From positions 62,001-126,000 of IMG/VR virus record IMGVR_UViG_3300004151_000006: DNA of 64,000 nucleotides. One strand, given 5' to 3'. Each line of letters starts with the position of its first letter. Position 1 is the first letter of the stretch. Made by a program: the position numbers and the translations under genes. Below are positions 3,622 to 63,223 of the stretch, piece by piece. Below the pieces are notes generated by a model, which saw only the letters and a program-made list of their open reading frames with translations, had not been told where the DNA came from and did not search any database.

Positions 3622-3653
3622 GACTAGGAGGTGGCATCTGCCACCTCCTAGTC
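3622..3653 (+). terminator. 15-bp stem/2-nt loop inverted repeat, likely terminator
   Basis: GACTAGGAGGTGGCA-TC-TGCCACCTCCTAGTC followed by TTTCGTCTTCTTTT. Confidence 0.75.
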
Positions 3654-3710
3654 TTTCGTCTTCTTTTCGTTTCACTCAAAGATATAATGGATGATATCCA
3701 TCACATATTT

Positions 3711-3731
3711 AAATATATATTATTTTATTGA
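3711..3731 (+). promoter_or_regulatory. phiKZ-type early promoter
   Basis: AAATATATATTA-N6-TGA motif, recurring about 11 times upstream of + strand gene runs. Confidence 0.65.
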
Positions 3732-3773
3732 ACTTTAATCCTTTAATATCTTTTACTTGGAGGTAATGTACAT

Positions 3774-4283
3774 ATGGATAAAATCTCAAAATTGAGACCT
3801 GAACTACAGGCACTCAAAGATCTATTTGATCCCCGTAAACGTGAACTAAAAAACATCCGTGAATTGGTCAAACATGATCCCTCTTATGTAAAAGAACTGC
3901 TGGGTGTAATTGAAGATGGACTTGATGATTTTAAATATCAATGTGAACTTGATAAATCACAACTTGCAAGTCAGGCATTGATTGGTATGATCGGCTTATT
4001 GTTGGATTATAAAAAGATAGCTAAAATCAACAGTGTTGCCGGAAAAAGAAAATTCTGTATCATGGTTATTGACACCATTTTATATCATTACCCCAACGGA
4101 TATCCTTTTCATGGTAGTCCAAATGATAAACAGTTTGTAGATACCTTTTGTACTTTTTATTTTCATGAAAATATTGCAGATTTACATGGTTCACATTGGG
4201 AAAAAGAAACTAAAGATTGTCATGAATATATGTGTAAGCTAAAGGAACAATGGATATCTATCCAAACAGGAGAAACATCATGA
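3774..4283 (+). CDS. hypothetical protein
   Basis: GGAGG RBS, 169 aa. Confidence 0.75.
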   Translation: MDKISKLRPELQALKDLFDPRKRELKNIRELVKHDPSYVKELLGVIEDGLDDFKYQCELDKSQLASQALIGMIGLLLDYKKIAKINSVAGKRKFCIMVIDTILYHYPNGYPFHGSPNDKQFVDTFCTFYFHENIADLHGSHWEKETKDCHEYMCKLKEQWISIQTGETS

Positions 4284-4756
4284 AAAATTTATATCAATAT
4301 GATGTATATGATCCGACTAAACGTGAGATTTTACATTATTATGGTATATCTGGTCCTGACCTGGAAGGTAATGATCTCATTTCTTTTAATATGAGAACTG
4401 AATCTAGTACTCATGCAAAATGTATCAAAAACAAAACTGTAATTCTGCAAGATGTGCTAGATAGTATTTATGTATTGGGTGGTACTTTGGATTCATGGAC
4501 TAAAGTTCATCCATTTAGTGCTGTGCATGAAACACTTATGTTGGCTATGATGAATGATATTAAAAATGAACATGTAGATTTCCTTAGATATGTATATATG
4601 ACAGATATTGATTTTACTGAACTCATGAAAAAAGGTATAGCAACATATACCAAAGAACATACTGCGTCAGTTGTATTTAATGATAAATGTGATAAAATGT
4701 ATAATTTTCATAAACTTGAAAAAATCCCCATCATGGAGGAAACTGATGATCACTAA
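4280..4756 (+). CDS. hypothetical protein
   Basis: AGGAG RBS, ATGA overlap; start revised from 4250. Confidence 0.7.
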   Translation: MKNLYQYDVYDPTKREILHYYGISGPDLEGNDLISFNMRTESSTHAKCIKNKTVILQDVLDSIYVLGGTLDSWTKVHPFSAVHETLMLAMMNDIKNEHVDFLRYVYMTDIDFTELMKKGIATYTKEHTASVVFNDKCDKMYNFHKLEKIPIMEETDDH

Positions 4757-5081
4757 AATCATGCTTCAAAATCGTGAAGATGATTCAATGTGGCATGTGC
4801 ATGATAAAATCATGTTTGATTTAGCACTATACGTGGATAATAGCTATTATGCTATTCACCTTGAAACTAAAGAAGAAAAACAATACGAATTAATTAATCA
4901 ACTGTATTTGTTGGAATCTTTATTTGGAAAAAAAGAAACCCAACAAATCTCAAATTTTATTTTAACTGATTTTGATAAAGCTGAAGCTGAATTGAAAAAT
5001 ATCATGGATATGTATCGAGAGGTTAAACATGGTAAAGATTATGAAAAACAAGGTATGTTAAATCGAGTCGATTTATGTTAA
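4746..5081 (+). CDS. hypothetical protein
   Basis: GGAGG RBS; start revised from 4671. Confidence 0.65.
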   Translation: MITKIMLQNREDDSMWHVHDKIMFDLALYVDNSYYAIHLETKEEKQYELINQLYLLESLFGKKETQQISNFILTDFDKAEAELKNIMDMYREVKHGKDYEKQGMLNRVDLC

Positions 5082-5524
5082 TAGTCTTATCACGAATAGA
5101 GAAATATAATGAATTGATCAATAGAGTGATTGAATATACCACCCTACCCGATGGGTGGGGTGGTCATGATACTGATAAAGCACCAAGTGATCTAGTCATC
5201 AATCAGGCACATCTATGGTTGCATCTTTGTAGTGAATATACAGATATCCCACCACCACACGTTACCTGTTCCACTGATAATGAAATTTGTTTAGAATGGA
5301 AACCAGATGGTGAATATAAAAGTTATTGTAGAATATTTATTAAAAATGATAGTATTTATGGTATGTTTGTGGATTATCAGAATAATAAATACTTTTCACA
5401 ATTACCCTGGTTTCATGCTACTACTCGAAAGGAACAATTCAAACAAATGAGTGTACTTCTTTTAAGAAATATTAACAATCTTGAACCCAAAAAGGAGACT
5501 CTAAGGTATGATGGATTATATTAA
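5075..5524 (+). CDS. hypothetical protein
   Basis: 149 aa, overlaps neighbours; LPDGWGG motif. Confidence 0.65.
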   Translation: MLIVLSRIEKYNELINRVIEYTTLPDGWGGHDTDKAPSDLVINQAHLWLHLCSEYTDIPPPHVTCSTDNEICLEWKPDGEYKSYCRIFIKNDSIYGMFVDYQNNKYFSQLPWFHATTRKEQFKQMSVLLLRNINNLEPKKETLRYDGLY

Positions 5525-6836
5525 TGAATTGCTCAAAGTAATTCAATCAAATCCGATAGCAGCTAGTATCTTTGGTGCATCCACTGTAGCTGGATTATTT
5601 GTATGGGCTAGAAATATTCCAATGCAATTATTTGATTTTATTATAAACCGTATCACAAAGACTCTCACACTTGACAATTCACAACATGGTTACATTATCA
5701 ATATATTGGAAACTTATATTGAAAAAATCTATTATGCACCTAAAAATGATTTTAGTCTATCCGATGATTTAAATTCTAAAAACCAAAATGGTTCTGCTGA
5801 TAAACTAACCATTGGAGAGAATTCTACATTTTATTGTAAATTGAATGGAAAAATATGTAAAATCTCAAAATATATAGCAGGACAAAATACAAGAAATTTT
5901 ACCATGGGAGCAATTGGTCATGGGCGTAATTCTACAGATAGGCAGGTTTATAATTTTACAATAATGACACTGCGAAATATAACTTTGCTAAATTGGTATA
6001 CTGAGATCAGATCAATTCATGATAGGAACTTAAAAAAGCGAGATCATCTATTGTGTATTTTAGATGAAAATAGAGCCACCTGTGAAAAACCCTTGATCAA
6101 TTTTGATAAACTTATTTTACCAAAATCCACTAAATCTCTGGTAGATACTATCATAAATAATCTTGAATCAAATAACACATTTTATCGAGAAAGAAATATT
6201 CCACATAAAGAAGGTATATTGTTATATGGATCCCCAGGTTGTGGAAAATCTCTCTTTATACAGGGTATAGCTAGCAAATATGGATATGTCATACAATATA
6301 TTAATTTAAATCAGGTTGATGAGAATGGTTTGTTAAATATATTCACTACTGAAATGGAAAAGGTCATATTTCTCATTGAGGATATTGATTGTCAAATCAA
6401 TACTTCAATCAATAGAAATGCTCAAATCAAGTCTGAAAATTCAGGTGTATCCTTAGCACTGTTACTCAATATCTTAGATGGTATCTTGACTAAATCTAAA
6501 CAATTTGTAATCGTGACTACAAATAACATTGATGCTCTTGATCCAGCACTCATTCGTGATGGCCGTTTTAACAGTAGGATAGAATTTAAACCATTTACAT
6601 CAGATTTGATTCTTGAATATTTAAAGATGTTCTATGGTGAAAATCTATGCAGTCTTCGTGAAGAACAAATAAAAAGCTTACTCAATAAATATCCAGAAGC
6701 TACCATCACACCTGCTAAACTTGCATCTATCTGTATCAGACATAAACAGGGTTTAAATAATGAAGCAGTCTCTGAATTAAAACAGCATTTAAAAACAACC
6801 ATTATGCTTCAAAAAGAAGGAAACAACAATGGCTGA
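5508..6836 (+). CDS. BCS1-like AAA+ ATPase with N-terminal membrane anchor
   Basis: Walker A GSPGCGKS, Walker B FLIEDID, LLNILDG, VTTNN, DPALIRDGRF; hydrophobic N-terminus. Confidence 0.85.
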   Translation: MMDYINELLKVIQSNPIAASIFGASTVAGLFVWARNIPMQLFDFIINRITKTLTLDNSQHGYIINILETYIEKIYYAPKNDFSLSDDLNSKNQNGSADKLTIGENSTFYCKLNGKICKISKYIAGQNTRNFTMGAIGHGRNSTDRQVYNFTIMTLRNITLLNWYTEIRSIHDRNLKKRDHLLCILDENRATCEKPLINFDKLILPKSTKSLVDTIINNLESNNTFYRERNIPHKEGILLYGSPGCGKSLFIQGIASKYGYVIQYINLNQVDENGLLNIFTTEMEKVIFLIEDIDCQINTSINRNAQIKSENSGVSLALLLNILDGILTKSKQFVIVTTNNIDALDPALIRDGRFNSRIEFKPFTSDLILEYLKMFYGENLCSLREEQIKSLLNKYPEATITPAKLASICIRHKQGLNNEAVSELKQHLKTTIMLQKEGNNNG

Positions 6837-7635
6837 CACATCATTTGAAACATCAAATGCATACTTAAAGAATTTCCTCAGAGATAAGTTATATGCAAAA
6901 TATACAGAGACTAAAGTCGTAGAACATCATTGCGCTATAAATGAAACATCTAGTACTCCAGAATATAATTACATGTTGGATGAAATCATGTTTCCCACTA
7001 CAAATGAATGGAATGAATGTTTTAAGATTATACTAAAAGGATATGGATATACCTCAGCTGAAATAATGAAAGCTAGTGAACAATTTATTTCAAATATTGG
7101 TGGAATGTTTTATCTTGAATGTGAAAAAGATCCCAAATATAAATTCACACATATAGATTACATCACCAAACAGATCACTGTTCTAGTTTCGCATGATAAC
7201 AAACATCCATGGGAACTTAATCTTGAATTTAATGATAAAAAATCTTTAGAAAATGAATTTAAGTTTTTATCTTCAATCCCCGACATTCAACGTGAAACAC
7301 GCCGATTTTTATATGATTACACTGATAATGATAAATTACTATTTAATATAGATTTTCCTAAAGATATCATTACCTTTCTTAATTTTGGTATAAATATAAA
7401 CAGTCGAATAGATTATAAAAGAAATAAAATCATCTTAGAAGCCACAGTGGCTGAATATTCAGGTCAAAAATATTATTATACTGTAACTGGAAGTAGATTA
7501 CGTGGCATGATGCAAAAACAACCCAATCACATGCATACCATTCCCCCAATTGAACGATACTTGAGTGATATTGGGATCCTTAATATGCATGAGATGTATG
7601 TTGAAATGTATCAGGATTTAATGCTCTTAATTTGA
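6829..7635 (+). CDS. hypothetical protein
   Basis: 268 aa ORF overlapping the ATPase stop. Confidence 0.7.
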   Translation: MADTSFETSNAYLKNFLRDKLYAKYTETKVVEHHCAINETSSTPEYNYMLDEIMFPTTNEWNECFKIILKGYGYTSAEIMKASEQFISNIGGMFYLECEKDPKYKFTHIDYITKQITVLVSHDNKHPWELNLEFNDKKSLENEFKFLSSIPDIQRETRRFLYDYTDNDKLLFNIDFPKDIITFLNFGININSRIDYKRNKIILEATVAEYSGQKYYYTVTGSRLRGMMQKQPNHMHTIPPIERYLSDIGILNMHEMYVEMYQDLMLLI

Positions 7636-7758
7636 ATATATCACTATATTTTTATAAAGTATTTTTATCTTATAATACCACCTCTGTTTACAGTCTATTC
7701 AAGTAGTGATCACCATGTAACTATATACCTACTCTTGGTATGTAAAAAGGATATCGAC

Positions 7759-8262
7759 ATGCAGGCTCTAGCTACTACAATCGATGTGGTGTCTCAGGCT
7801 GATGATATTAATCGTCTCTATGATGAATCTATGGAGATAGTCACACACTACTCTATTGAGCACATGCACTTCGAATTTGAGACGATCAATCCAAAACAAT
7901 ATAGACTGGTCCATCTGGATATGCCACGTGTGGGCGAATGGGATCAGATCTTTGTACAGGTACTCGGTGATATACTCTCGTATAATCAGTATCTCAAGTT
8001 GTATCCTACTTTTATAAAGAATCAATCTGCTACCAAACGTGTGATCTTTCCTTCCAATACTTACATTAACAAATTTAAATATGATACATCTCGAATGGAT
8101 GCTGTGATTGAATGGCCCACCGTAGAAGATACTTCTATGTATCAAGAGCGTACTGTGATTTATACACCCATTTTACTTAAAATTATGCAAAGTATCCACG
8201 GTATGTTGACTAATCTCCATCAGCTACATAATCAATACAATCGTATACATCTCGTCAAATAG
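7759..8262 (+). CDS. hypothetical protein
   Basis: AAGGA RBS; start revised from 7735. Confidence 0.65.
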   Translation: MQALATTIDVVSQADDINRLYDESMEIVTHYSIEHMHFEFETINPKQYRLVHLDMPRVGEWDQIFVQVLGDILSYNQYLKLYPTFIKNQSATKRVIFPSNTYINKFKYDTSRMDAVIEWPTVEDTSMYQERTVIYTPILLKIMQSIHGMLTNLHQLHNQYNRIHLVK

Positions 8263-8277
8263 ACAATGCCAATGAAT

Positions 8278-8315
8278 TGGATACAGAGGATCCCCATGGG
8301 GATCCTCTGTATCCA
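8278..8315. repeat. 38-bp perfect palindrome (no loop)
   Basis: TGGATACAGAGGATCCCCA|TGGGGATCCTCTGTATCCA. Confidence 0.95.
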
Positions 8316-8336
8316 CACCCATAAAGGAGTATCTTC

Positions 8337-8705
8337 ATGATCATTAAAGAAAGTGGTTTTTATGGGATCAGCCCACACCCTACAGACAATATCAACAGTC
8401 CCACCAATCAAATACCAACAGCAGTAGTATATCTCAATGGTGGGTGCATCGAAGGTGTCATTTCCAATATCCCAGGATTAGAAGTACATTTCCTTGATTA
8501 TGATACAGATGGTATTGATCAAGATGATCCTAATCTGATGGATCTCTCTGAAGAAGAAGACAAAACTGATCTCCAATACATGAGTACTCATGTGACAAAT
8601 GATATCATGAGTGATACCGAATATCAACATATTAAAGAATTGGAAGCTAAACGTATGGCTAGACATGAAGTCATTGAAAAGGAGAACAATAATGAACAAG
8701 TATGA
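8337..8705 (+). CDS. acidic hypothetical protein
   Basis: AAGGAG RBS, 122 aa. Confidence 0.65.
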   Translation: MIIKESGFYGISPHPTDNINSPTNQIPTAVVYLNGGCIEGVISNIPGLEVHFLDYDTDGIDQDDPNLMDLSEEEDKTDLQYMSTHVTNDIMSDTEYQHIKELEAKRMARHEVIEKENNNEQV

Positions 8706-9378: not shown

Positions 9379-9383
9379 TATAA

Positions 9384-9421
9384 CTAGACTACCATGGGAC
9401 ATGTGTCCCATGGTAGTCTAG
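9384..9421. terminator. 18-bp stem/2-nt loop between convergent genes
   Basis: CTAGACTACCATGGGACA-TG-TGTCCCATGGTAGTCTAG, downstream T-tract. Confidence 0.8.
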
Positions 9422-9444
9422 ACACAATCTTTATTTTTTTTTAA

Positions 9445-10191: not shown

Positions 10192-10937
10192 GATCTCCCC
10201 TTAAGTTAAGTCTATAACATAAAAACCATAATAGAACTTTCACACATGAGGTGCCTTCAGGCACCTCATGTACTAATTGATAAAAGATAAGATTTACTTG
10301 AGTAAAAATTTGAAGTGCAGCAATCTCGATCCTCCCTCATCTGGTGTGCAGGCCTACCCCCGGCCTGCACACGCAGACTCGGTTCGGATCTCGTAAGGAA
10401 TAAGAACTAGTACCATAAGATAACACAAAGAATATAAAATAATTTTAATATTCTTATTTTTATTAAATTAAACAATCTTAGTTTACTTTCATTACACTTT
10501 CTAAATAAGACAAAGGAATGAGATAGACAGGAGATGGATAAGACCATCTCCTGTCTATCTCGTCTTAAGAGATCCATATACAAGACAAATACAATATGGA
10601 ACTAGGAGATGTATCTTAAGATACATCTCCCCATATATGATATGAAGATCCCCCCTTCTTCCCCCACCCCAGGCAAAGCGGCACCACCACGGTGTCGTTT
10701 TGTCTGTGGTACAATATTGAGATATTCACCTTGGGTCATCACCCTTAGGGGCTGTCTTTAGTGTGAGTAAATACTCAGGATATACATCCGATGACCTCAG
10801 GTCATCACTATTTAAAATATATATCATAATGATGAAGACTATGTCATATCTCATTGAAATAGTGATCTTGGATCGGCTTATCTCCGTCGAAGACGCCGGA
10901 TGATCTGACTGTTTTTTCTATCCTTAAAAGGAGGATA
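10192..10937. other. ~745-bp structured non-coding region (candidate replication origin or ncRNA)
   Basis: No ORF; stems at 10244-10271, 10344-10372, 10520-10561, 10605-10630, 10670-10706, 10790-10806; AT-rich core ~10420-10505; repeated ATAAGA. Confidence 0.45.
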
Positions 10938-10940
10938 TTG

Positions 10941-13303: not shown

Positions 13304-13306
13304 ATC

Positions 13307-13891
13307 ATGAATCTTCAACTTAGATTATCTAAAAAATGTGATTATTATAGTGGATGTGGTGGTTATCCATATTCATGGAAAGATACACTTCAAGATATCA
13401 AATTAGCATTTGGGATGTTCTTTATACGTTTGGGTGGTGATGATTTTATTAGGACATCTATTCATTATAAATACAACTTGATAGATAAAGAGCAATTTGT
13501 AATTAATGGTGTGTCTCGTTTTAGAATCTCAAGTAGCCCCGATTCTGTTTTTTACTTATTGTATGGGCATGTTGGTAGAATTGAAGATCACAATCATTGT
13601 GCTACTTTTATATTATTTGAAAATAATATAAAAACTGGTGTGGTGTTACATTTTTGTACTAAAGATTTGTCTGGAAAAATATCCCAACTTCCAGACCTAC
13701 CAATACATGAAGATAAATCTACGTTTTATGATGTAGAACCAGAACCCCATTATGGTGGGCTTATACTCATATGTAGACAGAAATATGTTGGTATACCAAA
13801 AAATAAAGTATTTAAAAGTACTGTTAATTTAAAATTTGATGGAGAAAATTTCCAACTAGCCAATATTGTAAATGAAATGGTCCATTGGTGA
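13307..13891 (+). CDS. hypothetical protein
   Basis: 194 aa ORF. Confidence 0.6.
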   Translation: MNLQLRLSKKCDYYSGCGGYPYSWKDTLQDIKLAFGMFFIRLGGDDFIRTSIHYKYNLIDKEQFVINGVSRFRISSSPDSVFYLLYGHVGRIEDHNHCATFILFENNIKTGVVLHFCTKDLSGKISQLPDLPIHEDKSTFYDVEPEPHYGGLILICRQKYVGIPKNKVFKSTVNLKFDGENFQLANIVNEMVHW

Positions 13892-13928
13892 GTGTGATGG
13901 GGTGGGGATATCCCCACCCCATCACACT
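13891..13928. repeat. 38-bp perfect palindrome (no loop)
   Basis: AGTGTGATGGGGTGGGGAT|ATCCCCACCCCATCACACT. Confidence 0.95.
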
Positions 13929-13972
13929 TGATCAAAAAAGATAGTATAGAAGAAAGATATGGAGGAAAGCAT

Positions 13973-15325: not shown

Positions 15326-15330
15326 ACACA

Positions 15331-15359
15331 TGGGATGAGGGCTCAAGGCCCTCATCCCA
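15331..15359. repeat. 12-bp stem inverted repeat abutting the next RBS
   Basis: TGGGATGAGGGC-TCAAG-GCCCTCATCCCA then AAAGGAG. Confidence 0.85.
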
Positions 15360-15371
15360 AAAGGAGAAAGT

Positions 15372-16190: not shown

Positions 16191-16217
16191 CATTAACCTT
16201 AAACCCAAGAGGACATT

Positions 16218-16559: not shown

Positions 16560-16574
16560 AATCATACATAGTTT

Positions 16575-16595
16575 AAATATATATTACATACTTGA
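16575..16595 (+). promoter_or_regulatory. phiKZ-type early promoter
   Basis: AAATATATATTACATACTTGA. Confidence 0.7.
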
Positions 16596-16622
16596 TACTA
16601 TCCAAAATAAGGAGGATTACCA

Positions 16623-19159: not shown

Positions 19160-19195
19160 GATAGGTGTGGGTGGGATATCCCACCCACACCTATC
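19160..19195. repeat. 36-bp perfect palindrome (no loop)
   Basis: GATAGGTGTGGGTGGGAT|ATCCCACCCACACCTATC. Confidence 0.95.
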
Positions 19196-21095: not shown

Positions 21096-21127
21096 ATGGA
21101 TGGATCCCCTGTAGGGGATCCATCCAT
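21096..21127. repeat. 15-bp stem/2-nt loop inverted repeat
   Basis: ATGGATGGATCCCCT-GT-AGGGGATCCATCCAT. Confidence 0.9.
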
Positions 21128-23405: not shown

Positions 23406-23437
23406 AGATGGGAGACGGCCTAGGCCGTCTCCCATCT
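23406..23437. repeat. 32-bp perfect palindrome (no loop)
   Basis: AGATGGGAGACGGCCT|AGGCCGTCTCCCATCT, followed by an early promoter motif at 23445-23465. Confidence 0.95.
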
Positions 23438-24213: not shown

Positions 24214-24513
24214 TCAAGCACAGGGGAGAGGCACCCATCTCCTGGGTGCCTCTCCTGACCTGGCTGTTCACCCCAAACAAGGAAGCTCATGGTGCCCACA
24301 TACACCATAGGTATAAGACAGCTGATCCTCATCTATCCTACACCCATAGGATATTTGAGATGAAATATATTTAGATCTATATTTTTTTTTCATGATGAAA
24401 GAAATAAACTATATACTGTGAGTGATCCCATTATATATTCAAAACATCTTATGTCTATAGATACTCACACTAGTAATAGTGTTTACTATATCATTTGGAA
24501 AGGAGTCAAGCAA

Positions 24514-26833: not shown

Positions 26834-26861
26834 TGGGATGGGGGCCCAAGCCCCCATCCCA
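26834..26861. repeat. 12-bp stem inverted repeat followed by early promoter (26882-26902)
   Basis: TGGGATGGGGGC-CCAA-GCCCCCATCCCA. Confidence 0.85.
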
Positions 26862-28143: not shown

Positions 28144-28177
28144 CTGCATGGGGGCCCATCCTTGGGCCCCCATGCAG
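28144..28177. terminator. 15-bp stem between convergent genes
   Basis: CTGCATGGGGGCCCA-TCCT-TGGGCCCCCATGCAG. Confidence 0.8.
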
Positions 28178-30290: not shown

Positions 30291-30311
30291 AAATATATAT
30301 TACATATAGGA
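30291..30311 (+). promoter_or_regulatory. phiKZ-type early promoter
   Basis: AAATATATATTAC. Confidence 0.6.
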
Positions 30312-33622: not shown

Positions 33623-33652
33623 GAGGATGCATCCCATATGGGATGCATCCTC
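33623..33652. repeat. 30-bp perfect palindrome (no loop)
   Basis: GAGGATGCATCCCAT|ATGGGATGCATCCTC. Confidence 0.95.
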
Positions 33653-36516: not shown

Positions 36517-36548
36517 GTGGGATGGTGGGGATCTCCCCACCATCCCAC
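36517..36548. terminator. 15-bp stem/2-nt loop inverted repeat
   Basis: GTGGGATGGTGGGGA-TC-TCCCCACCATCCCAC. Confidence 0.8.
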
Positions 36549-39376: not shown

Positions 39377-39404
39377 ATCAGGGTGGGCATATGCCCACCC
39401 TGAT
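39377..39404. repeat. 28-bp perfect palindrome between convergent genes
   Basis: ATCAGGGTGGGCAT|ATGCCCACCCTGAT. Confidence 0.95.
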
Positions 39405-40518: not shown

Positions 40519-40558
40519 TACTACATGAGGCATGGTGCGGGCCATGCCTCATGTAGTA
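40519..40558. repeat. 17-bp stem inverted repeat followed by early promoter (40581-40599)
   Basis: TACTACATGAGGCATGG-TGCGGG-CCATGCCTCATGTAGTA. Confidence 0.9.
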
Positions 40559-40639
40559 TGTGGATGTCAATGGATCATGGATATATATTACTAGTATGAA
40601 ATCTGTCATTAACCTAAACTTTTTAGAGGTAAACACATC

Positions 40640-41476: not shown

Positions 41477-41507
41477 GATAGGGTGCTGCATAATGCAGCA
41501 CCCTATC
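41477..41507. repeat. 15-bp stem/1-nt loop followed by early promoter (41533-41544)
   Basis: GATAGGGTGCTGCAT-A-ATGCAGCACCCTATC. Confidence 0.92.
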
Positions 41508-45770: not shown

Positions 45771-45802
45771 CTCATACTGGATACAGCTGTATCCAGTATG
45801 AG
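45771..45802. repeat. 32-bp perfect palindrome abutting an RBS
   Basis: CTCATACTGGATACAG|CTGTATCCAGTATGAG then AGGAGGAG. Confidence 0.95.
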
Positions 45803-48350: not shown

Positions 48351-48397
48351 GTACACTACAGGGGTATAGTCGAGATGACTATACCCCTGTAGTGTAC
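48351..48397. repeat. 21-bp stem inverted repeat followed by early promoter (48416-48436)
   Basis: GTACACTACAGGGGTATAGTC-GAGAT-GACTATACCCCTGTAGTGTAC. Confidence 0.92.
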
Positions 48398-49742: not shown

Positions 49743-49772
49743 ACCAGAGCACCCAGTATTGGGTGCTCTGGT
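49743..49772. repeat. 13-bp stem inverted repeat followed by early promoter (49798-49818)
   Basis: ACCAGAGCACCCA-GTAT-TGGGTGCTCTGGT; a further hairpin at 49701-49720. Confidence 0.88.
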
Positions 49773-54232: not shown

Positions 54233-54263
54233 GATAAGGTGCTCCACAGTGGAGCACCTTATC
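54233..54263. repeat. 15-bp stem/1-nt loop inverted repeat
   Basis: GATAAGGTGCTCCAC-A-GTGGAGCACCTTATC. Confidence 0.92.
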
Positions 54264-57683: not shown

Positions 57684-58444
57684 TGATGTCTCAGACTTTC
57701 ACCTGTACTAAAGAACATAATGTGACTTTACCTAAGCATGCTATCTACGATTATATCGCTGATGAATACATTGATGTTGAAACAGTGATGGAAGTGAAAG
57801 ATGAACTTGGTCGTGTGAAAGATTTGGAATACAGTAAGAAACAAAATATCAAAGGTTTGATGTTGGCTTGGCCTGATGAAGAAAATAAACTCATTCGTAT
57901 TGGATATTCGAGATGTCATACATCTGATAAATTCAATATGGTAGATGCTATCAATGTAGCACTGGAACGTGGTAATACTAAATATGAATATATTGTATTT
58001 GATGAAGTGAGAGAATTTGAAACCCAGTTTATGAAGTTTCGTGATCGTGTGAAGAAATATTACAAACAACTTATGTTTAAAGAGTGGCGTATGTTTAGAT
58101 ATCTTGAAAAGTGCCAATCACCAACAATAACTCTCGTATCTGTTGATGAAAATGGATTTGTACGTATGAAAATTCCTGAAAATTTTAATTTTAGTTGTAA
58201 TCGTAATAATCGTATTTATACCCCAGAAGCAGTGGGTGAAGCTATTGGAAAAATACATGAAGAAAGTAAAAAGTGTTTTAAGAATAAAACTACTACGGTT
58301 ACTAATGAAGGTAAGAATGATATTGTCCATTTAATTATCAGTGGTACTAGTCATATTGATTTTTCTATGATTAAGTTTAATCATGTTGGAAATAATAGTA
58401 TTCATATCCCTGGTGACGTGGTAGTTACCGTTAGACCCAAATAG
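57683..58444 (+). CDS. hypothetical protein
   Basis: KGLMLAWPDE..IGYSRC domain shared with the previous gene. Confidence 0.7.
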   Translation: MMSQTFTCTKEHNVTLPKHAIYDYIADEYIDVETVMEVKDELGRVKDLEYSKKQNIKGLMLAWPDEENKLIRIGYSRCHTSDKFNMVDAINVALERGNTKYEYIVFDEVREFETQFMKFRDRVKKYYKQLMFKEWRMFRYLEKCQSPTITLVSVDENGFVRMKIPENFNFSCNRNNRIYTPEAVGEAIGKIHEESKKCFKNKTTTVTNEGKNDIVHLIISGTSHIDFSMIKFNHVGNNSIHIPGDVVVTVRPK

Positions 58445-58452: not shown

Positions 58453-58480
58453 TGAGTGGAGAGCCTTAGCTCTCCACTCA
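58453..58480. repeat. 12-bp stem inverted repeat before an RBS
   Basis: TGAGTGGAGAGC-CTTA-GCTCTCCACTCA. Confidence 0.85.
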
Positions 58481-58494
58481 CACAAGGAGACATC

Positions 58495-59211
58495 ATGGAT
58501 TTTAATTTTTCAACACACCGAAAACTTAATTCATTAAAGAAACAAATTGTAGATGAATTTAATGAATATTTAAAACCTAGAAACATTCTGTTAAATGATC
58601 ATTCTCCTCTTGCAGTACAAATGGAATTGCATGCTGTAAATCTGAAGTTTATTGAAATACCTTTAAATGATGATGATGTGATGAATGCTAGACTGGTAGT
58701 TATGGCTGATAAAGAAATATTTGATATTTATTTCAATACACATAATAAAGCTACTGAATTCTATGAAAGTATTGATAAACCAACACAGGCAGCAATGGTG
58801 TTTGGTATGTGCACAATGTCAATTCCATCTGATTTACAATGTTTGATTCGTGAACTTAATGATAAAAATAATAAGCTATATCAGATGTTTATTGAATTGT
58901 GTATGGAAATCCGATTAGCCAATCTGGAATTGATGATAATTAATAGTTTAGTGAATGTTGATAGATATGAGTTGGGAAAAGATATTCAAGATTTACTCAA
59001 TACTGGAGAACATGCATATATTCATGTATTGATTGATTATTGGTTTGGTACCATTACACTAGAAGACTTAAAGAGTAAAGTTGGAAAGGCGGACAAATAT
59101 GGAATATTGAAGATCATTGATAGGGTTATTATTTCTAAATATCAAATCTATCGTGAATATCAAGATCATTATACTGATTATTTTCAAAGTCACTCTGCAA
59201 AGGATAGATAG
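58495..59211 (+). CDS. hypothetical protein
   Basis: AAGGAG RBS; start revised from 58456. Confidence 0.7.
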   Translation: MDFNFSTHRKLNSLKKQIVDEFNEYLKPRNILLNDHSPLAVQMELHAVNLKFIEIPLNDDDVMNARLVVMADKEIFDIYFNTHNKATEFYESIDKPTQAAMVFGMCTMSIPSDLQCLIRELNDKNNKLYQMFIELCMEIRLANLELMIINSLVNVDRYELGKDIQDLLNTGEHAYIHVLIDYWFGTITLEDLKSKVGKADKYGILKIIDRVIISKYQIYREYQDHYTDYFQSHSAKDR

Positions 59212-59240
59212 TGTGGGCCCCATATGGGGCCCACACTATC
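59207..59240. repeat. 34-bp perfect palindrome between convergent genes
   Basis: GATAGTGTGGGCCCCAT|ATGGGGCCCACACTATC. Confidence 0.95.
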
Positions 59241-59261: not shown

Positions 59262-60164
59262 TTATCTACTACCTGGAAAAGGTTTATCCCATTTACATTC
59301 AGTAGCTGCAGTATGTATCCAATATACACCATCAGATAACCTTTCAGCTTTTCCAGTCTTTAAGTATTTTTCAATATCTTTAAAAATATGTTCACACTCA
59401 TTAGCTCTTTCCCAAGCAAATCCAACTGTACCAACATATATACCTTCTTCAAAGAGTGGTGTCTTTAAGACATCAAGAACGATGAGTTTATCACCAATAT
59501 ATCCACATTCTACATATCTACATTGTTTACCTTGATCTCGAGCATGAAAATCAGTATTCATACAAAGATCACCAAAAGTATGTCTGATTTTTTTAGATTC
59601 TCTAAAAGCATCTAAGAGTTCAGCATCATCCATACCAACAATGTCACAAGTATCTTTCATACCAAAAAAGAAATCACACCAAGTGGGATCACAATATAAA
59701 TATCTACCTTTACTATCTTTGTACCAAACATATCCACCAGCAGCAGCTACCATAGCTTTGATGATCTTATTTTGTCTACGTAATGCATCATATTTAAATT
59801 CTTTTCTAACTAAGCCATCACTATACCAACACAATGAAGAGAAAATAATAAATATCATACCTTCTAAGAGTGGCCAAATCAAATCATGGAATTCATCATT
59901 TGGTACAAAGATATCAATAGTCTGTGCCATCAAATATGAAATAGATAACATGATAGTACCCCAAGTAAGCTTACTAATATAGACTAATGAAACAGGATTC
60001 TCATTGGGTTGATTGAAGGGATAAATCTTTCTAATGTTTTGATAATATATATAAAGTTTGATACCTAAAGTAAGTGCCACAATAGCTGCCACTAATGAAA
60101 ATGAATATTGTATTAATTTTGTGATCACTGGATGAAGATCAATGAATATGTTAATGGGAAACAT
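59262..60164 (-). CDS. membrane-anchored PAS-domain protein (3 TM + PAS, no output domain)
   Basis: VWYKDSKGRYLYCD...DIVGMDD...LDVLKTPL..GIYVGTVGFA is a PAS/PAC pattern. Confidence 0.8.
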   Translation of the reverse strand: MFPINIFIDLHPVITKLIQYSFSLVAAIVALTLGIKLYIYYQNIRKIYPFNQPNENPVSLVYISKLTWGTIMLSISYLMAQTIDIFVPNDEFHDLIWPLLEGMIFIIFSSLCWYSDGLVRKEFKYDALRRQNKIIKAMVAAAGGYVWYKDSKGRYLYCDPTWCDFFFGMKDTCDIVGMDDAELLDAFRESKKIRHTFGDLCMNTDFHARDQGKQCRYVECGYIGDKLIVLDVLKTPLFEEGIYVGTVGFAWERANECEHIFKDIEKYLKTGKAERLSDGVYWIHTAATECKWDKPFPGSR

Positions 60165-61473: not shown

Positions 61474-61515
61474 ATATCACCTCCTGGGTGTGATGAATCA
61501 AAAGACTGTTTAGAT

Positions 61516-61884
61516 TTAAAAAGTAATAGTACTGATGTTTTCAGAAGAAGCGATCTCCATGGCAGTGACACCAGTGCCAAGGATGAATCCAGGAGGAAGA
61601 TCATCTTCACTGATATTACGTGTAGCACAGCAGGGTTTACAACACAGGATCTCAATACCGCTATCCAAGATGACTTTCATGTGATCAGCCATCTGATCAC
61701 CAGTGACAGCTTTCACATTCGCTGTCACCTGGGGGTTGGTAAAATAGACTGCATCATCCACCAACATGATACCTTTAAGGGTACCGCTGTCTTTGGCCAG
61801 CTTTGCAAACTGAAAACAGCGAGTAGCCTTTGTGGGATTTTCAGGACCACAGGTCAAAATGAAAAAGAGTGATTGACGGGTCAT
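61516..61884 (-). CDS. DsrE/TusD-like sulfur-carrier protein
   Basis: AGGAG RBS; LTCGPEN...LVDDAVY...ILCCKPCCATRNI...TITF. Confidence 0.8.
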   Translation of the reverse strand: MTRQSLFFILTCGPENPTKATRCFQFAKLAKDSGTLKGIMLVDDAVYFTNPQVTANVKAVTGDQMADHMKVILDSGIEILCCKPCCATRNISEDDLPPGFILGTGVTAMEIASSENISTITF

Positions 61885-61903
61885 GTGTATAACTCCTATC
61901 GGA

Positions 61904-62275
61904 TCACAGATCCGTAGTCGATTGAAAAAGATCAGAATGATTTTCAACAGTTTTATTGTCCGGATGATCCACTTTATAACTCACTAAATACATACTGATA
62001 ATGTATACCCACAATGCACCATGCTTACAGAAGAAAGGTATCCACCATCCAGCATTGAGATTACCCTCTATCATCACAATAGATTGATAACATTGCATGA
62101 TAGAGAGAAACATTACACTGACCACCATAAAGTGCATATACTTATTATTCTCTTTATTTTGAGTCTTAAATTTAGTAGAGATCCAAATAGATATTCCGAC
62201 ACAAAAAACTGATGATGCTAAGAGATAAAAATATCCAATCTTAATCAGATTGACTTCCATTGATGTGAATTGCAT
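61904..62275 (-). CDS. membrane protein (3 TM)
   Basis: GGAGG RBS before ATG 62275. Confidence 0.65.
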   Translation of the reverse strand: MQFTSMEVNLIKIGYFYLLASSVFCVGISIWISTKFKTQNKENNKYMHFMVVSVMFLSIMQCYQSIVMIEGNLNAGWWIPFFCKHGALWVYIISMYLVSYKVDHPDNKTVENHSDLFQSTTDL

Positions 62276-62371
62276 TACACCTCCCATGTGAAACACATTC
62301 TTGCCCCAACTCATAAGATATTTTTTAAAGACCTATCGTATGAGTAAATATTTTAAGGAGGGATATATCCC

Positions 62372-63118
62372 ATGACTACAAATTTTCAAGCTGCTAAAGC
62401 AGAATTGGGTGATATTGAGGGATTCTATTCTAATGATTCAAAAGATAGGGGTGGTGAAACTCTTTATGGTTGGGCAAGAAATTATCATCCTGAGATTGAA
62501 TTTTGGTCTAAACTTGACCAATATAAAAAACAGTATGGTGGTTGGAATGATAAGTGTGCTGCTGCAGTAAAGGCTGATCCATATTTTAAAGAAGTATCTG
62601 ATAGAGAATATAAGAAGCAATATTGGGATTTCTTTGATGGTGATAATATACCCTATTCATTATCCCTTGAAATTTTTGAGGTTTGTGTCAATCTTGGCGT
62701 TGGTGGAGGAGTGAGATTGCTTCAAGCCGTGCTCAATGGTCACAATTATGAAAATAAATTTGGTATTGATTTGAAGATGCCTTATGATGGGGTGTTTGGT
62801 GATAATACACGAAAAATGTTCAAAGCTATGTTAGCTGCTGGGTATGCTGAATCTATTCAATATGGGATAAATGCTGAGCAGGGACATTATTATCGGACAA
62901 GGACTGAAGAAAATATAGATAAACGAAAGTATTATCGGGGTTGGTTACGTACTCGGTGTAAAGCATCTTTTAAACAAAATCCTGGAGACATTGTTGTAAC
63001 AAATACTGCACCTGTGATAGTTGAATCTAATTCAACCAATCTATTTACAGAAGATGATATTAATAATATTAAGATGTTGACTGAAACGTTACAATCAATC
63101 TTAAAGAAAGTGATGTAA
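62372..63118 (+). CDS. GH108 lysozyme (endolysin) with peptidoglycan-binding domain
   Basis: EGFYSNDSKDRGGETLYG, YKKQYW, LLQAVLN..DGVFG..T, YYRGWL. Confidence 0.88.
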   Translation: MTTNFQAAKAELGDIEGFYSNDSKDRGGETLYGWARNYHPEIEFWSKLDQYKKQYGGWNDKCAAAVKADPYFKEVSDREYKKQYWDFFDGDNIPYSLSLEIFEVCVNLGVGGGVRLLQAVLNGHNYENKFGIDLKMPYDGVFGDNTRKMFKAMLAAGYAESIQYGINAEQGHYYRTRTEENIDKRKYYRGWLRTRCKASFKQNPGDIVVTNTAPVIVESNSTNLFTEDDINNIKMLTETLQSILKKVM

Positions 63119-63190
63119 ATTTTATTATAGTAGTGAAATTATAGTTGTTATCTTGATAAAGTTAGCTATTAAATTGTAAATGACAATATC

Positions 63191-63223
63191 ATAGCTCTGG
63201 GTGCACAGTGCACCCAGAGCTAT
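63191..63223. repeat. 16-bp stem/1-nt loop followed by early promoter (63241-63251)
   Basis: ATAGCTCTGGGTGCAC-A-GTGCACCCAGAGCTAT. Confidence 0.92.

What the first reader, a model, noticed from the sequence alone, without database searches (positions are those of the whole stretch)
3622..63223. Window-wide punctuation by GC-rich perfect palindromes with zero or tiny loops
Seen: about 25 intergenic inverted repeats with 12-21-bp perfect arms. Nine have no loop (8278, 10605, 13891, 19160, 23406, 33623, 39377, 45771, 59207) and eight have 1-2-nt loops. Arm sequences are unrelated, but the 5' arm is generally G-rich and centres recur (GATATC x2, CATATG x3, CAC-A-GTG x2). Many lack a U-tract, and several directly abut the next RBS in co-directional operons (15331, 45771, 54233, 58453). 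The arms have no G-U pairs, which fits selection at DNA level (cruciforms) or on both strands. Inference: factor-dependent or phage-RNAP terminators, RNase III-type processing sites, or structure-recognised recombination sites delimiting gene cassettes.
Basis: partly seen in the sequence, partly recalled or inferred. Interest (0 to 1): 0.7.

Follow-up and report, generated by a model that had tools for sequence, protein, structure and literature searches.

The report
Gene-end perfect palindromes of a jumbo phage
An uncultured phiKZ-like giant phage from fresh water marks about a third of its gene ends with very stable, perfectly symmetric GC-rich hairpins that most likely end or protect its transcripts on both strands; this is an unusual, U-tract-free and loop-less version of a known kind of signal.

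Summary
The window holds 27 perfect inverted repeats with arms of 12-21 bp. All nine zero-loop and eight 1-2-nt-loop cases sit at the stated coordinates. The 286.7-kb record holds 102, against 0-1 in shuffles.

The record is a freshwater-metagenome jumbo phage with phiKZ-type split RNA polymerase genes and the phiKZ early-promoter core TATATTAC. The hairpins start a median of 8 nt after stop codons. They occupy 68% of roomy convergent junctions and 10% of divergent ones. Their positions are conserved in relatives at 33% and 61% protein identity while their sequences turn over.

They are not canonical intrinsic terminators. No T-run lies within 8 nt of any stem, and energies are -22 to -38 kcal/mol. 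They also differ from the mapped phiKZ terminators, which have short C-first stems and UUCG loops.

My best reading is hairpin-only, bidirectional signals that form transcript 3' ends for the phage polymerases. Pairing runs to the very centre three times more often than expected. Orthologues differ only by mirrored changes. This suggests DNA-level templated copying between arms, or selection on both strands. No RNA data exist, so the function is inferred.

The hairpins also cluster in variable gene blocks, as T4 PeSLs do. I rate this a new variant of a known kind, of moderate interest.

The parts
3622..3653 (.). Hairpin, 15-bp arms, 2-nt loop. Starts 8 nt after the stop of the virion-protein gene 1913-3613. 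One of the few with a T-rich tail.
   Evidence: dG -28.1
8278..8315 (.). Zero-loop palindrome, 19-bp arms, centre CCATGG. Starts 15 nt after the stop of 7735-8262.
   Evidence: dG -32; Logan contigs break here
9384..9421 (.). Hairpin, 18-bp arms, 2-nt loop, at the convergent junction of 8611-9378(+) and 9445-10191(-). A hairpin sits at the orthologous junction in relative R, with an unrelated sequence.
10244..10271 (.). Hairpin, 13-bp arms, 2-nt loop, inside the 750-nt non-coding region 10192-10937.
10520..10561 (.). Hairpin, 18-bp arms, 6-nt loop, in the non-coding region. The orthologue in relative R keeps the basal 8 bp, shows a mirrored C:G to G:C change, and has a replaced but still perfect apex.
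10605..10630 (.). Zero-loop palindrome, 13-bp arms, centre CTTAAG, in the non-coding region.
13891..13928 (.). Zero-loop palindrome, 19-bp arms, centre GATATC. It exactly fills the gap between 13307-13891 and 13928-15325.
   Evidence: dG -37.9, z -7.1
15331..15359 (.). Hairpin, 12-bp arms, 5-nt loop. Starts 5 nt after the stop and ends next to the following ribosome-binding site. The orthologue in R differs by a mirrored 1-nt indel and a replaced apex.
19160..19195 (.). Zero-loop palindrome, 18-bp arms, centre GATATC. Starts 21 nt after the stop of 18704-19138.
   Evidence: dG -34.8
21096..21127 (.). Hairpin, 15-bp arms, 2-nt loop, 43 nt before gene 21171-22277. Member of the GGATCCCC arm family.
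23406..23437 (.). Zero-loop palindrome, 16-bp arms, centre CCTAGG. Starts 9 nt after the stop of 23037-23396. R has a hairpin at the orthologous position with an unrelated sequence.
24225..24255 (.). Hairpin, 13-bp arms, 5-nt loop. Starts 11 nt after the stop of 23809-24213, at the edge of a block of differing gene content versus R.
26834..26861 (.). Hairpin, 12-bp arms, 4-nt loop. Starts 8 nt after the stop of 26055-26825. The distant relative G1 has a hairpin at the orthologous position.
28144..28177 (.). Hairpin, 15-bp arms, 4-nt loop, at the convergent junction before the chemotaxis-receptor gene 28191-30221(-).
   Evidence: dG -33.8
33623..33652 (.). Zero-loop palindrome, 15-bp arms, centre CATATG, 68 nt before the large terminase gene. 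R has a hairpin at the same place with an unrelated sequence.
36517..36548 (.). Hairpin, 15-bp arms, 2-nt loop. Starts 8 nt after the stop of 36002-36508. The orthologue in R shows a mirrored G:C to C:G change and a mirrored shift of a G-run.
39377..39404 (.). Zero-loop palindrome, 14-bp arms, centre CATATG, ending 3 nt before the 3' end of 39408-40217(-). The core GGGTGGGCAT|ATGCCC and the zero loop are conserved in R.
40519..40558 (.). Hairpin, 17-bp arms, 6-nt loop, followed 25 nt later by a TATATTAC promoter-like motif.
41477..41507 (.). Hairpin, 15-bp arms, 1-nt loop, 73 nt before 41581-41931.
45771..45802 (.). Zero-loop palindrome, 16-bp arms, centre CAGCTG. Starts 31 nt after the stop and overlaps the next ribosome-binding site and start.
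   Evidence: dG -22.7
48351..48397 (.). Hairpin, 21-bp arms, 5-nt loop. Starts 4 nt after the stop of 47849-48346.
   Evidence: dG -38.1
49743..49772 (.). Hairpin, 13-bp arms, 4-nt loop (C-first polarity), 48 nt after the tRNA-Val/tRNA-Asn pair.
54233..54263 (.). Hairpin, 15-bp arms, 1-nt loop (CAC-A-GTG). Starts 7 nt after the stop of 53773-54225.
58453..58480 (.). Hairpin, 12-bp arms, 4-nt loop. Starts 8 nt after the stop of 57683-58444 and ends next to the following ribosome-binding site.
59207..59240 (.). Zero-loop palindrome, 17-bp arms, centre CATATG, at the convergent junction of 58456-59211(+) and 59262-60164(-).
   Evidence: dG -34.5, z -8.4
63191..63223 (.). Hairpin, 16-bp arms, 1-nt loop (CAC-A-GTG), followed 20 nt later by a TATATTAC motif.
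16580..16587 (+). TATATTAC promoter-like core in the extended context TTTAAATATATATTAC, 35 nt before gene 16623.
30296..30303 (+). TATATTAC promoter-like core, 35 nt before gene 30339.
40584..40591 (+). TATATTAC promoter-like core, 25 nt after hairpin 40519-40558 and 48 nt before gene 40640.
63244..63251 (+). TATATTAC promoter-like core, 20 nt after hairpin 63191-63223 and 19 nt before gene 63271.

Best explanation
The palindromes mark the ends of transcription units in an uncultured phiKZ-like jumbo phage that transcribes its genome with its own split multisubunit RNA polymerases.

Proposed mechanism. Each palindrome, once transcribed, folds into a 12-21-bp perfect RNA stem. In zero-loop cases the central 4 nt open into a tetraloop. 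This stem defines the transcript's 3' end, by making the phage polymerase terminate without an adjacent U-tract and/or by blocking 3' exonucleases. A perfect palindrome gives the same hairpin on both strands, so each one works in both directions and insulates neighbouring units from sense and antisense read-through. The typical start 4-12 nt after the stop codon would put the stem just outside a terminating ribosome.

What is shown: the location, the stability, the positional conservation, the phage polymerase genes and the phiKZ-like promoters.

What is inferred: that RNA 3' ends actually lie there.

Second-level inference (about 0.3): the Watson-Crick perfection, the pairing that runs into the loop, and the mirrored transversions and indels between orthologues arise from DNA-level template switching. 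That process copies one arm from the other, so it both creates and renews the hairpins.
For: 1. The record has 102 perfect hairpins with arms >=12 bp, against 0-1 in shuffles.

2. Hairpins start a median of 8 nt after the upstream stop codon. Among junctions with a gap >=25 nt, they occupy 19 of 28 convergent, 45 of 103 co-directional and only 3 of 31 divergent ones.

3. RNA folding of the 66 nt after every stop is bimodal. 98 of 326 gene ends fold at <= -20 kcal/mol, against 17 of 326 in-gene controls. Single examples fold at -22 to -38 kcal/mol with z scores of -5 to -8.

4. phiKZ-type RNAP subunit genes are present: phrog_2962, 2987, 3295, 3015 and 3148 (x2). 43 ORFs match phiKZ by BLAST.

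5. Sigma-70-like promoters are not enriched: 109 found against 126+-12 expected.

6. The phiKZ early-promoter core TATATTAC, in a conserved AT-rich context, lies 20-50 nt before genes. In six cases it lies 12-29 nt after a hairpin.

7. TCTTATAG precedes the capsid and sheath genes.

8. The number is similar to the experimentally mapped terminators in phiKZ (133) and 201phi2-1 (132, of which 15 are bidirectional) (PMC10914365, PMC11512511).

9. Hairpin positions are conserved after orthologous genes while sequences are replaced. Against G1 (33% aa identity): both 11, neither 19, one genome only 11; Fisher p=0.009. Against R (61% aa identity): both 5, neither 9, one genome only 3; p=0.035.

10. 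Five alignable orthologous hairpins differ only by mirrored changes.

11. The central 4 nt are fully self-complementary in 33 of 73 hairpins, against 11.0+-2.8 expected.

12. Template switching is documented to create and repair perfect stems (PMC8794818).
Against: - There is no RNA evidence. No RNA run was listed for this sequence, so no 3' end has been seen.

- No T-run lies next to the stems, on 0 of 204 sides. The mapped phiKZ terminators do have a conserved TTAT tail and a different stem (C-first, 7-9 bp, UUCG loop). Termination by a hairpin alone has therefore not been demonstrated for this polymerase family.

- Several hairpins sit directly against the next ribosome-binding site with no promoter in between (15331, 45771, 58453). 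If they terminated efficiently, the downstream gene would be silenced.

- A cluster of five hairpins lies in a divergent non-coding region (window 10192-10937).

- RNA function does not require a palindromic loop.

- Gene calls are a longest-ORF heuristic, so the junction classes carry some error.
Confidence: 0.6

Rival explanations
1. The hairpins are RNA processing or stability elements only. Transcription runs through them. Host RNase III or another nuclease cuts the long perfect stems, or 3' exonucleases stop at them, giving discrete mRNAs from polycistronic precursors, as in the Mimivirus 'hairpin rule' or at the T7 RNase III sites.
For: The stems are long (12-21 bp) and perfectly Watson-Crick, with no U-tract. 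Some sit directly before the next ribosome-binding site with no promoter in between. The Mimivirus precedent is of unrelated palindromes at gene ends cleaved by a viral RNase III (PMC4402537).
Against: Neither Pfam RNase III model finds a match in the record. Promoter-like motifs follow several hairpins, which fits the ends of transcription units. If the phage forms a nucleus-like compartment as phiKZ does, host RNases would be excluded during synthesis, but that compartment is not established here.
Confidence: 0.17
2. The palindromes function at the DNA level. They extrude as cruciforms or offer structure or microhomology for recombination. In this way they bound gene cassettes and drive gain and loss of accessory genes, as PeSLs do in T4-type phages. 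Any hairpin in the RNA is secondary.
For: - Pairing runs to the centre: 33 of 73 cores are palindromic, against 11 expected.
- The centres are AT-rich.
- G:T mismatches are almost absent: only 2 internal mismatches among 113 hairpins.
- Hairpins are rare between genes that stay adjacent in both genomes (1 of 14) and common in blocks of differing gene content (about 0.4 per junction).
- The edges of the variable blocks between this phage and R carry hairpins in both genomes.
- Arms fall into loose sequence families.
- The phage encodes SbcC/SbcD-like and UvsX-like proteins.
Against: - The hairpins are strongly tied to gene 3' ends rather than 5' ends: 68% of convergent against 10% of divergent junctions. 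A purely DNA-level element has no reason for that bias.
- The distance to the stop codon is tight, while the distance to the next start varies.
- Arm sequences are too diverse and too short for homologous recombination.
- Moron-like genes that carry their own terminators would give the same correlation with variable regions.
Confidence: 0.13
3. The palindromes are copies of small mobile palindromic elements (REP-, MITE- or GC-cluster-like) that have spread into intergenic spacers of an AT-rich genome.
For: They are GC-rich palindromes in a 33-35% GC genome. Arms share 8-10-mers far more than shuffles do. Similar arms occur at non-orthologous sites in relatives.
Against: No Y1/TnpA_REP transposase is found. 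There are no conserved flanks or target duplications. The hairpins sit precisely after stop codons, and their positions are conserved across deep divergence. Most arms are unique.
Confidence: 0.05
4. The palindromes are assembly artefacts (fold-back errors of a de Bruijn assembler).
For: Logan k=31 contigs break exactly at the 38-nt zero-loop palindromes.
Against: The same sequences occur in four separate runs and samples and in an independent JGI assembly that is 100% identical over 22 kb. Overlapping contigs cover both sides. Relatives carry palindromes at orthologous sites.
Confidence: 0.01

Closest known systems
Experimentally mapped terminators of phiKZ and 201phi2-1 (ONT-cappable-seq; PMC10914365, PMC11512511)
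   Same: Same phage type, a jumbo phage with phiKZ-type split RNAPs. Similar number per genome: 102 perfect hairpins here against 133 and 132 mapped terminators. In all three they lie at gene ends and between convergent genes. Some act in both directions. They are GC-rich stems in AT-rich genomes. The early-promoter core TATATTAC is shared.
   Different: phiKZ has short stems (7-11 bp perfect), C-first polarity (47:18), a UUCG tetraloop and a conserved TTAT tail, with energies of about -7 to -19 kcal/mol. Here stems are 12-21 bp, polarity is G-first (76:15), centres are ATAT or fully palindromic, no T-run lies within 8 nt, and energies are -22 to -38 kcal/mol.
Canonical bacterial intrinsic (Rho-independent) terminators, including bidirectional ones
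   Same: A GC-rich hairpin just downstream of genes and at convergent junctions.
   Different: There is no adjacent U-tract (nor an A-tract on the other side). The stems are much longer and lack mismatches and G-U pairs. The loops are often absent as DNA sequence. Only 3 of the large palindromes in window 1-20000 pass a standard hairpin-plus-T scan.
Mimivirus 'hairpin rule' (palindromes at transcript 3' ends, cleaved by a viral RNase III and then polyadenylated; PMC4402537)
   Same: A large AT-rich virus with its own transcription machinery. Palindromes that are mostly unrelated in sequence punctuate gene ends. It is the structure that is conserved, not the sequence.
   Different: Mimivirus is a eukaryotic virus that polyadenylates its transcripts and encodes the cleaving RNase III. 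Here no match to either RNase III model is found. Only about 30% of gene ends carry a hairpin.
PeSLs (promoter-early stem-loops) of T4-type phages (PMC2839356, PMC4122927)
   Same: Composite terminator/promoter modules that flank small accessory genes in variable regions. Here six hairpins are followed within 12-29 nt by the early-promoter motif, and hairpins concentrate in blocks of differing gene content.
   Different: PeSLs are conserved in sequence and recombine by homology. Here the stems are diverse, and recombination at them has not been shown.
Template-switch (quasipalindrome) mutagenesis as a source of perfect stems (PMC8794818, PMC7202029)
   Same: It predicts perfect Watson-Crick arms, one-step multi-base 'compensatory' changes, mirrored indels and pairing that can extend into the loop. 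All of these are seen here.
   Different: This is a mutational process, not a functional class. No ancestral reconstruction was possible with the few relatives available.

Membership tests
Canonical intrinsic terminator | GC-rich RNA hairpin downstream of a gene | tested here: met
   Median 8 nt after stop codons; dG -22 to -38 kcal/mol
Canonical intrinsic terminator | U-tract immediately (0-2 nt) after the stem | tested here: not met
   TTTT within 8 nt on 0 of 204 sides, against 3.4% background. At least 5 T in the first 8 nt in 7 of 65.
phiKZ-type terminator motif (BCCYCCCCHWWDGGGRRGGBYTTAT) | C-rich 5' arm, about 8-bp stem, 4-nt W-rich or UUCG loop | tested here: not met
   Here polarity is G-first (76:15) and arms are 12-21 bp. 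phiKZ itself is C-first (47:18), with stems <=11 bp outside the core and a dominant TTCG core.
phiKZ-type terminator motif (BCCYCCCCHWWDGGGRRGGBYTTAT) | TTAT tail after the stem | tested here: not met
   TTAT within 10 nt in 7 and 14 of 102 on the two strands, against 6.5% background
phiKZ-type terminator motif (BCCYCCCCHWWDGGGRRGGBYTTAT) | Mapped RNA 3' ends at the hairpin | not testable with these tools
   No RNA run was listed
Mimivirus hairpin rule | Palindromes of unrelated sequence at most gene 3' ends | tested here: inconclusive
   Present at about 30% of gene ends. Sequences are mostly unique, with some shared k-mers.
Mimivirus hairpin rule | Virus-encoded RNase III that cleaves the hairpin | tested here: not met
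   PF00636 and PF14622 find nothing in the record. The record is incomplete.
PeSL (T4-type promoter-early stem-loop) | Stem-loop joined to an early promoter as one compact module | tested here: inconclusive
   Six hairpins are followed 12-29 nt later by TATATTAC. Most hairpins have no such motif.
PeSL (T4-type promoter-early stem-loop) | Located in variable (hyperplastic) regions and at indel boundaries | tested here: met
   1 of 14 junctions conserved as adjacent in both genomes carries a hairpin, against about 0.4 per junction in variable blocks. Block edges against R carry hairpins.
PeSL (T4-type promoter-early stem-loop) | Sequence conserved enough for homologous recombination | tested here: not met
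   Arms are diverse. Shared words are mostly 8-10 nt.
REP/BIME-like mobile palindromes | Repeated family with a conserved sequence and an associated Y1 (TnpA_REP) transposase | tested here: not met
   No PF01797 match. There are no conserved flanks.
N4-type DNA hairpin promoters | Short (5-7 bp) hairpin at a fixed distance upstream of transcription starts and genes | tested here: not met
   Stems are 12-21 bp. The distance to the upstream stop is fixed, while the distance to the next start varies from 0 to 300 nt.

The most novel reading that the evidence does not exclude
A branch of phiKZ-like jumbo phages has its own 'hairpin rule'. Transcript ends on both strands are set by very stable hairpins alone, with no U-tract. 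DNA-level template switching between the arms continuously creates these signals and keeps them symmetric, which is why they are perfect to the centre and evolve by mirrored multi-base changes. The same palindromes also serve as the seams at which accessory gene cassettes are exchanged. This would be a bacterial-virus counterpart of the Mimivirus system, reached independently, and a natural case of a mutational mechanism maintaining a regulatory structure.
Probability: 0.25. Interest if true: 0.7.

Novelty: new variant of a known kind. Interest (0 to 1): 0.5.

Why it matters
How the non-canonical multisubunit RNA polymerases of phiKZ-like phages terminate is not understood. A lineage whose gene ends carry only a long perfect hairpin, with T-runs avoided next to it, would show that a hairpin alone can suffice. 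It would also supply a set of strong, symmetric, sequence-diverse terminator or insulator parts.

The perfect-to-centre symmetry and the exclusively mirrored changes give a clean natural data set for asking whether template switching, rather than stepwise compensatory mutation, maintains RNA stems.

The link with variable gene blocks bears on how giant phages gain and lose accessory genes.

There is also a practical point. Such palindromes break k-mer assemblies, so genomes of this kind tend to be fragmented at exactly these sites.

Tried and rejected
- Rfam at gathering threshold on the whole window, and at E-value threshold on 10150-11000, gave only chance miRNA-like hairpin hits.
- Near and protein searches of the phage collection found no close relative.
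- The exact 30-nt palindrome was absent from other viral contigs.
- Laying DNA runs X1-X4 gave an identical sequence and no variants, so microdiversity could not be used.
- No RNA run was listed.
- The JGI contig could not be reached through genome handles. It was reached instead through an encoded protein.
- I tried to establish a chimallin (phage-nucleus shell) homologue at genome 173414-175288. BLAST and hhalign against phiKZ gp54, Pfam, and a PDB sequence search were not significant. The AlphaFold model had pLDDT 34. The ESM Atlas placed a chimallin cluster only at rank 34. The only support is synteny, equal length and a precomputed PF25677 tag on a 44%-identical homologue. I left this unresolved, so the argument that transcription is uncoupled from translation and from host factors is only a possibility.
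- My exact pattern for the published phiKZ terminator motif matched nothing in phiKZ. I replaced it with a hairpin census of phiKZ.
- An orientation test of G:U against A:C pairs had too few mismatches to be informative: 2 internal, plus 14 against 8 at stem ends.
- Rejected readings: assembly artefact, N4-like hairpin promoters and REP-like elements (see the membership tests).

Full report
WHAT THE WINDOW IS

The window is bases 62001-126000 of a single 286,688-bp record. The record is an IMG/VR viral contig assembled from freshwater metagenomes, with a GC content of about 33-35%. It is a tailed jumbo phage of the phiKZ kind.

- It encodes a large terminase and virion proteins.
- It encodes a phiKZ-like tail sheath, major head protein and split DNA polymerase.
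- It encodes six phiKZ-type split RNA polymerase beta/beta' pieces: phrog_2962, 2987, 3295, 3015 and 3148 twice.
- 43 ORFs match phiKZ ORFs by BLASTP at 20-36% identity.
- No close relative is in the phage collection.

THE OBSERVATION

A census of perfect hairpins (agreeing) finds 34 in the window with arms >=10 bp and loops <=8 nt. Of these, 27 have arms of 12-21 bp.

- The recurring centres are confirmed: GATATC x2, CATATG x3, CAC-A-GTG x2.
- The four cases that abut the next ribosome-binding site are confirmed.
- One 13-bp repeat (13606) is pure A/T inside an ORF and is probably chance.

Genome-wide there are 102 perfect hairpins with arms >=12 bp, against 0-1 in first-order Markov shuffles. 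Loop lengths are 0:33, 1:13, 2:20, 3:8, 4:17 and >=5:11.

Only 2 of 113 strong hairpins have an internal mismatch, and both are G:T.

The palindromes are real sequence. Four metagenome runs from separate samples and an independent JGI contig carry them unchanged. Logan's k=31 contigs break at the 38-nt zero-loop palindromes, which is an assembler effect.

WHERE THEY SIT

I used a longest-ORF gene set of 326 genes covering 94% of the record. It is crude, but adequate for a densely packed phage.

- The hairpins begin a median of 8 nt after the stop codon of the upstream gene, mostly 4-12 nt. The distance to the next start varies from 0 to about 300 nt.
- Among junctions with at least 25 nt of room, a perfect hairpin with arms >=11 bp is present at 19 of 28 convergent, 45 of 103 co-directional and only 3 of 31 divergent junctions.
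- Folding the 66 nt after each stop gives a bimodal picture. 98 of 326 gene ends fold at <= -20 kcal/mol and 86 at <= -25, against 17 and 8 for windows inside genes.
- Individual palindromes fold at -22 to -38 kcal/mol, z -5 to -8. The zero-loop ones open their central four bases into a tetraloop.

This is the signature of an element tied to gene and transcript 3' ends, not to 5' ends and not to DNA in general.

NOT ORDINARY TERMINATORS

- Within 8 nt of the stems there is no TTTT on any of 204 sides, against a background of 3.4%.
- Only 7 of 65 oriented hairpins have at least 5 T in the first 8 nt.
- A standard hairpin-plus-T scan recognises only three of the large palindromes in the first 20 kb.
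- T-runs are instead enriched 13-28 nt away: 68 of 204 sides against about 8%. Part of this belongs to the AT-rich upstream halves of the promoter-like motifs described below.
- Sigma-70-like promoters are not enriched: 109 found against 126+-12 expected.

THE TRANSCRIPTION SYSTEM

Two motifs are strongly enriched upstream of genes.

TATATTAC, in the extended context TTTAAATATATATTAC, lies 20-50 nt before starts at about a dozen intergenic sites. Six of these lie 12-29 nt after a hairpin. The same core, in a similar AT-rich context, is the repeated intergenic motif of phiKZ itself, where an AT-rich early-promoter consensus for the virion RNAP is documented (PMC10914365).

TCTTATAG occurs 12 times, 11 of them intergenic. 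It precedes, among others, the major-head and tail-sheath genes, so it behaves like a late promoter.

The phage therefore very probably transcribes itself in the phiKZ manner. Many palindromes occupy the slot gene end, then hairpin, then promoter, then next gene.

COMPARISON WITH MAPPED TERMINATORS

ONT-cappable-seq mapped 133 terminators in phiKZ. Of these, 61 share the motif BCCYCCCCHWWDGGGRRGGBYTTATKYYGT. In 201phi2-1 it mapped 132, of which 15 are bidirectional, with energies of -6.9 to -19.3 kcal/mol. The number per genome matches the 102 found here.

I ran my census on the phiKZ genome.

| Feature | phiKZ | This phage |
|---|---|---|
| Perfect stem outside a 4-nt core | at most 11 bp | mostly 11-17 bp |
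| Commonest core | TTCG | ATAT |
| 5' arm polarity | C-rich, 47:18 | G-rich, 76:15 (p=5e-11) |
| Cores fully palindromic (observed vs expected) | 7 vs 3.9 | 33 vs 11.0+-2.8 |

A perfect palindrome is its own reverse complement, so this polarity is a property of the element and not of the strand read.

RELATIVES

Three grades of relatives were recovered.

G1 is IMG/VR contig 3300034683_000041 (118 kb), with 41 reciprocal best hits at a median 33% amino-acid identity.

- It has 46 perfect hairpins with arms >=12 bp, but mostly 4-8-nt loops, including UUCG and GNRA types. Only 4 of 22 cores are palindromic.
- After orthologous genes, hairpins are present in both genomes 11 times, in neither 19 times and in one only 11 times. 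The odds ratio is 7 and Fisher p=0.009. The sequences are unrelated.

R is a 24-kb Logan contig (L106+L108), 70-77% nucleotide and a median 61% amino-acid identity.

- It has 18 hairpins. The counts after orthologous genes are both 5, neither 9 and one only 3, p=0.035.

L105 is a 2.5-kb contig at 78% nucleotide identity.

Of eleven orthologous hairpin positions between this phage and R or L105, six carry completely different sequences. Five can be aligned, and they differ only by mirrored changes.

- Window 10520: C:G to G:C.
- Window 36517: G:C to C:G, plus a mirrored shift of a G-run.
- Window 15331: a mirrored 1-nt indel.
- Genome 175307: centre ACAT in this phage, TTAA in L105. The outer pair A:T is T:A in L105, while all 22 stem bases are unchanged against 22% background divergence.
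- Window 39377: a conserved zero-loop CATATG core.

The hairpins thus evolve faster than the flanking genes yet are always perfect. The changes include transversion pairs and paired indels, which cannot pass through a G-U intermediate.

PALINDROMY TO THE CENTRE

I applied one uniform criterion: at least 10 bp of stem outside a 4-nt core.

- 33 of 73 even-centred hairpins have a fully self-complementary core, against 11.0+-2.8 expected from position-specific composition. None of 5000 shuffles reached the observed value.
- 20 more keep only the outer core pair, and 7 keep only the inner pair.
- 13 of 25 odd-centred hairpins have a 1-nt loop.

Neither an RNA nor a DNA hairpin can pair these central bases, so structural selection does not explain them. 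Two explanations remain, and they do not exclude each other.

- Selection for identical behaviour on both strands. This explains the absence of G-U pairs, but not palindromic loops.
- A templated DNA-level process that copies one arm from the other. Such template switching is documented to create perfect stems in one step, to repair them, and to produce multi-base 'compensatory' changes (PMC8794818; PMC7202029).

The mirrored transversions and indels fit the second explanation. I rate it plausible (about 0.3) but not shown.

LINK WITH VARIABLE GENE CONTENT

Between genes that are adjacent in both this phage and G1, only 1 of 14 junctions has a hairpin. In intervals where gene content differs, there are about 0.4 hairpins per junction, and 9 of 19 such intervals have a hairpin right next to an anchor gene.

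Against R, the edges of the two large variable blocks carry hairpins in both genomes. These are after window genes 13928-15325 and 23037-23396, and before 24418 and 22331.

It resembles the PeSL terminator/promoter modules of T4-type phages (PMC4122927). It is equally what one expects if conserved core genes form operons and each accessory gene brings its own terminator. The arms share more 8-10-mers than chance, but they are far too diverse for homologous recombination.

MECHANISM AND RIVALS

Best reading (0.6): hairpin-only, bidirectional elements that form transcript 3' ends for the phage RNAPs, by termination and/or as a 3'-exonuclease barrier. The 4-12-nt spacing from the stop would leave the stem just outside a terminating ribosome. 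That point is an inference from the known ribosome footprint, not a test.

Rivals:

- RNA processing or stability only (0.17). Neither RNase III model finds a match in the record; the host enzyme is not excluded.
- DNA-level cruciform or recombination seams (0.13). The 3'-end bias argues against this as the primary role.
- Mobile palindromic elements (0.05). There is no Y1 transposase, and the positions are conserved.
- Assembly artefact (0.01).

LIMITS

- No RNA data exist for this phage, so no transcript end has been seen.
- Gene calls are heuristic.
- The comparative sample is small: 41, 17 and 1 orthologous contexts.
- Logan contigs end at long perfect palindromes, which biases loop statistics in R. 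R begins and ends inside zero-loop palindromes.
- Whether the phage builds a phiKZ-like nucleus could not be established.
- The record itself is incomplete, so 'absent' genes may lie in the missing part.

VERDICT

The elements belong functionally with phage terminators. They form a distinct variant: long, perfect, G-first, free of an adjacent U-tract, often loop-less, and evolving by mirrored changes.

Novelty: new variant of a known kind. Interest: 0.5.

Noticed in passing
Genome record ends (G000:C1:1-60 and 286629-286688); L109:7597-13476: The 'inverted terminal repeat' of the IMG/VR record is the identical first ~60 nt (ribosome-binding site, ATG and 44 nt) of two paralogous genes. They lie in opposite orientation at the two ends of the record. 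The JGI contig Ga0209800_10000051 (300,343 nt) continues past the right end into a 470-aa paralogue and further genes that are absent from the record. The contig length implies about 45 kb more. The record is therefore incomplete despite CheckV's 100% estimate. The extra part also holds an 18-bp-arm zero-loop palindrome at a convergent junction.
   Followed up: partly
window 10192-10937: A 750-nt stretch without a credible ORF lies between divergent genes. It has five hairpins (10244, 10344, 10520, 10605, 10791) and GC-rich segments. Parts of it are conserved in the 72%-identical relative R: 87% identity over window 10393-10452, plus the orthologous 10520 hairpin. It is a candidate for one or more non-coding RNAs. 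Rfam gives only chance hits.
   Followed up: partly
window 28191-30221 (-): The phage carries a full-length methyl-accepting chemotaxis protein (4HB_MCP, HAMP, PAS and MCPsignal domains). It is also present, in two pieces, at the same place in relative R. This is an unusual auxiliary gene for a phage, and it hints at a motile host.
   Followed up: no
window 16580, 30296, 40584, 63244; genome 60092(-), 140979(-) and others: The phiKZ early-promoter core TATATTAC, with an AT-rich upstream context, is conserved in this distant freshwater relative. A second motif, TCTTATAG, precedes the capsid, sheath and other structural genes and behaves like a late promoter.
   Followed up: partly
genome 173414-175288 (L073:1372-3243): A 624-aa ORF lies immediately upstream of the phiKZ gp55 (RNAP) homologue. 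It has the same length and position as the phiKZ nuclear-shell protein gp54. Similarity is not significant by BLAST, hhalign, Pfam or PDB search, and the AlphaFold model is unusable (pLDDT 34). A 44%-identical homologue carries a precomputed Chimallin (PF25677) tag.
   Followed up: yes
window 8278-8315 and 13891-13928; both ends of L106/L108: k=31 Logan contigs end inside zero-loop palindromes of >=~32 nt. Genomes of this kind will be fragmented at exactly these sites in de Bruijn assemblies, and loop-less palindromes will be under-counted inside contigs.
   Followed up: partly
flanks of all hairpins, genome-wide: T-runs are absent from the 8 nt next to the stems (0 of 204 sides) but enriched about fourfold at +13 to +28 (68 of 204). 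Part of this is the AT-rich upstream half of the promoter-like motifs. Whether a displaced U-tract has a role is unknown.
   Followed up: partly
window 30654-33113: The 819-aa DEAD/HA2-type helicase gene has no counterpart at the orthologous site in relative R. There, the 104-aa HTH gene is followed directly by the small gene that precedes the terminase.
   Followed up: no
window 49539-49695 and 49743-49772: A tRNA-Val(TAC)/tRNA-Asn(GTT) pair is followed 48 nt later by one of the few C-first hairpins. The gene upstream (48433-49530) resembles an HNH-endonuclease gene that sits elsewhere in relative R.
   Followed up: no
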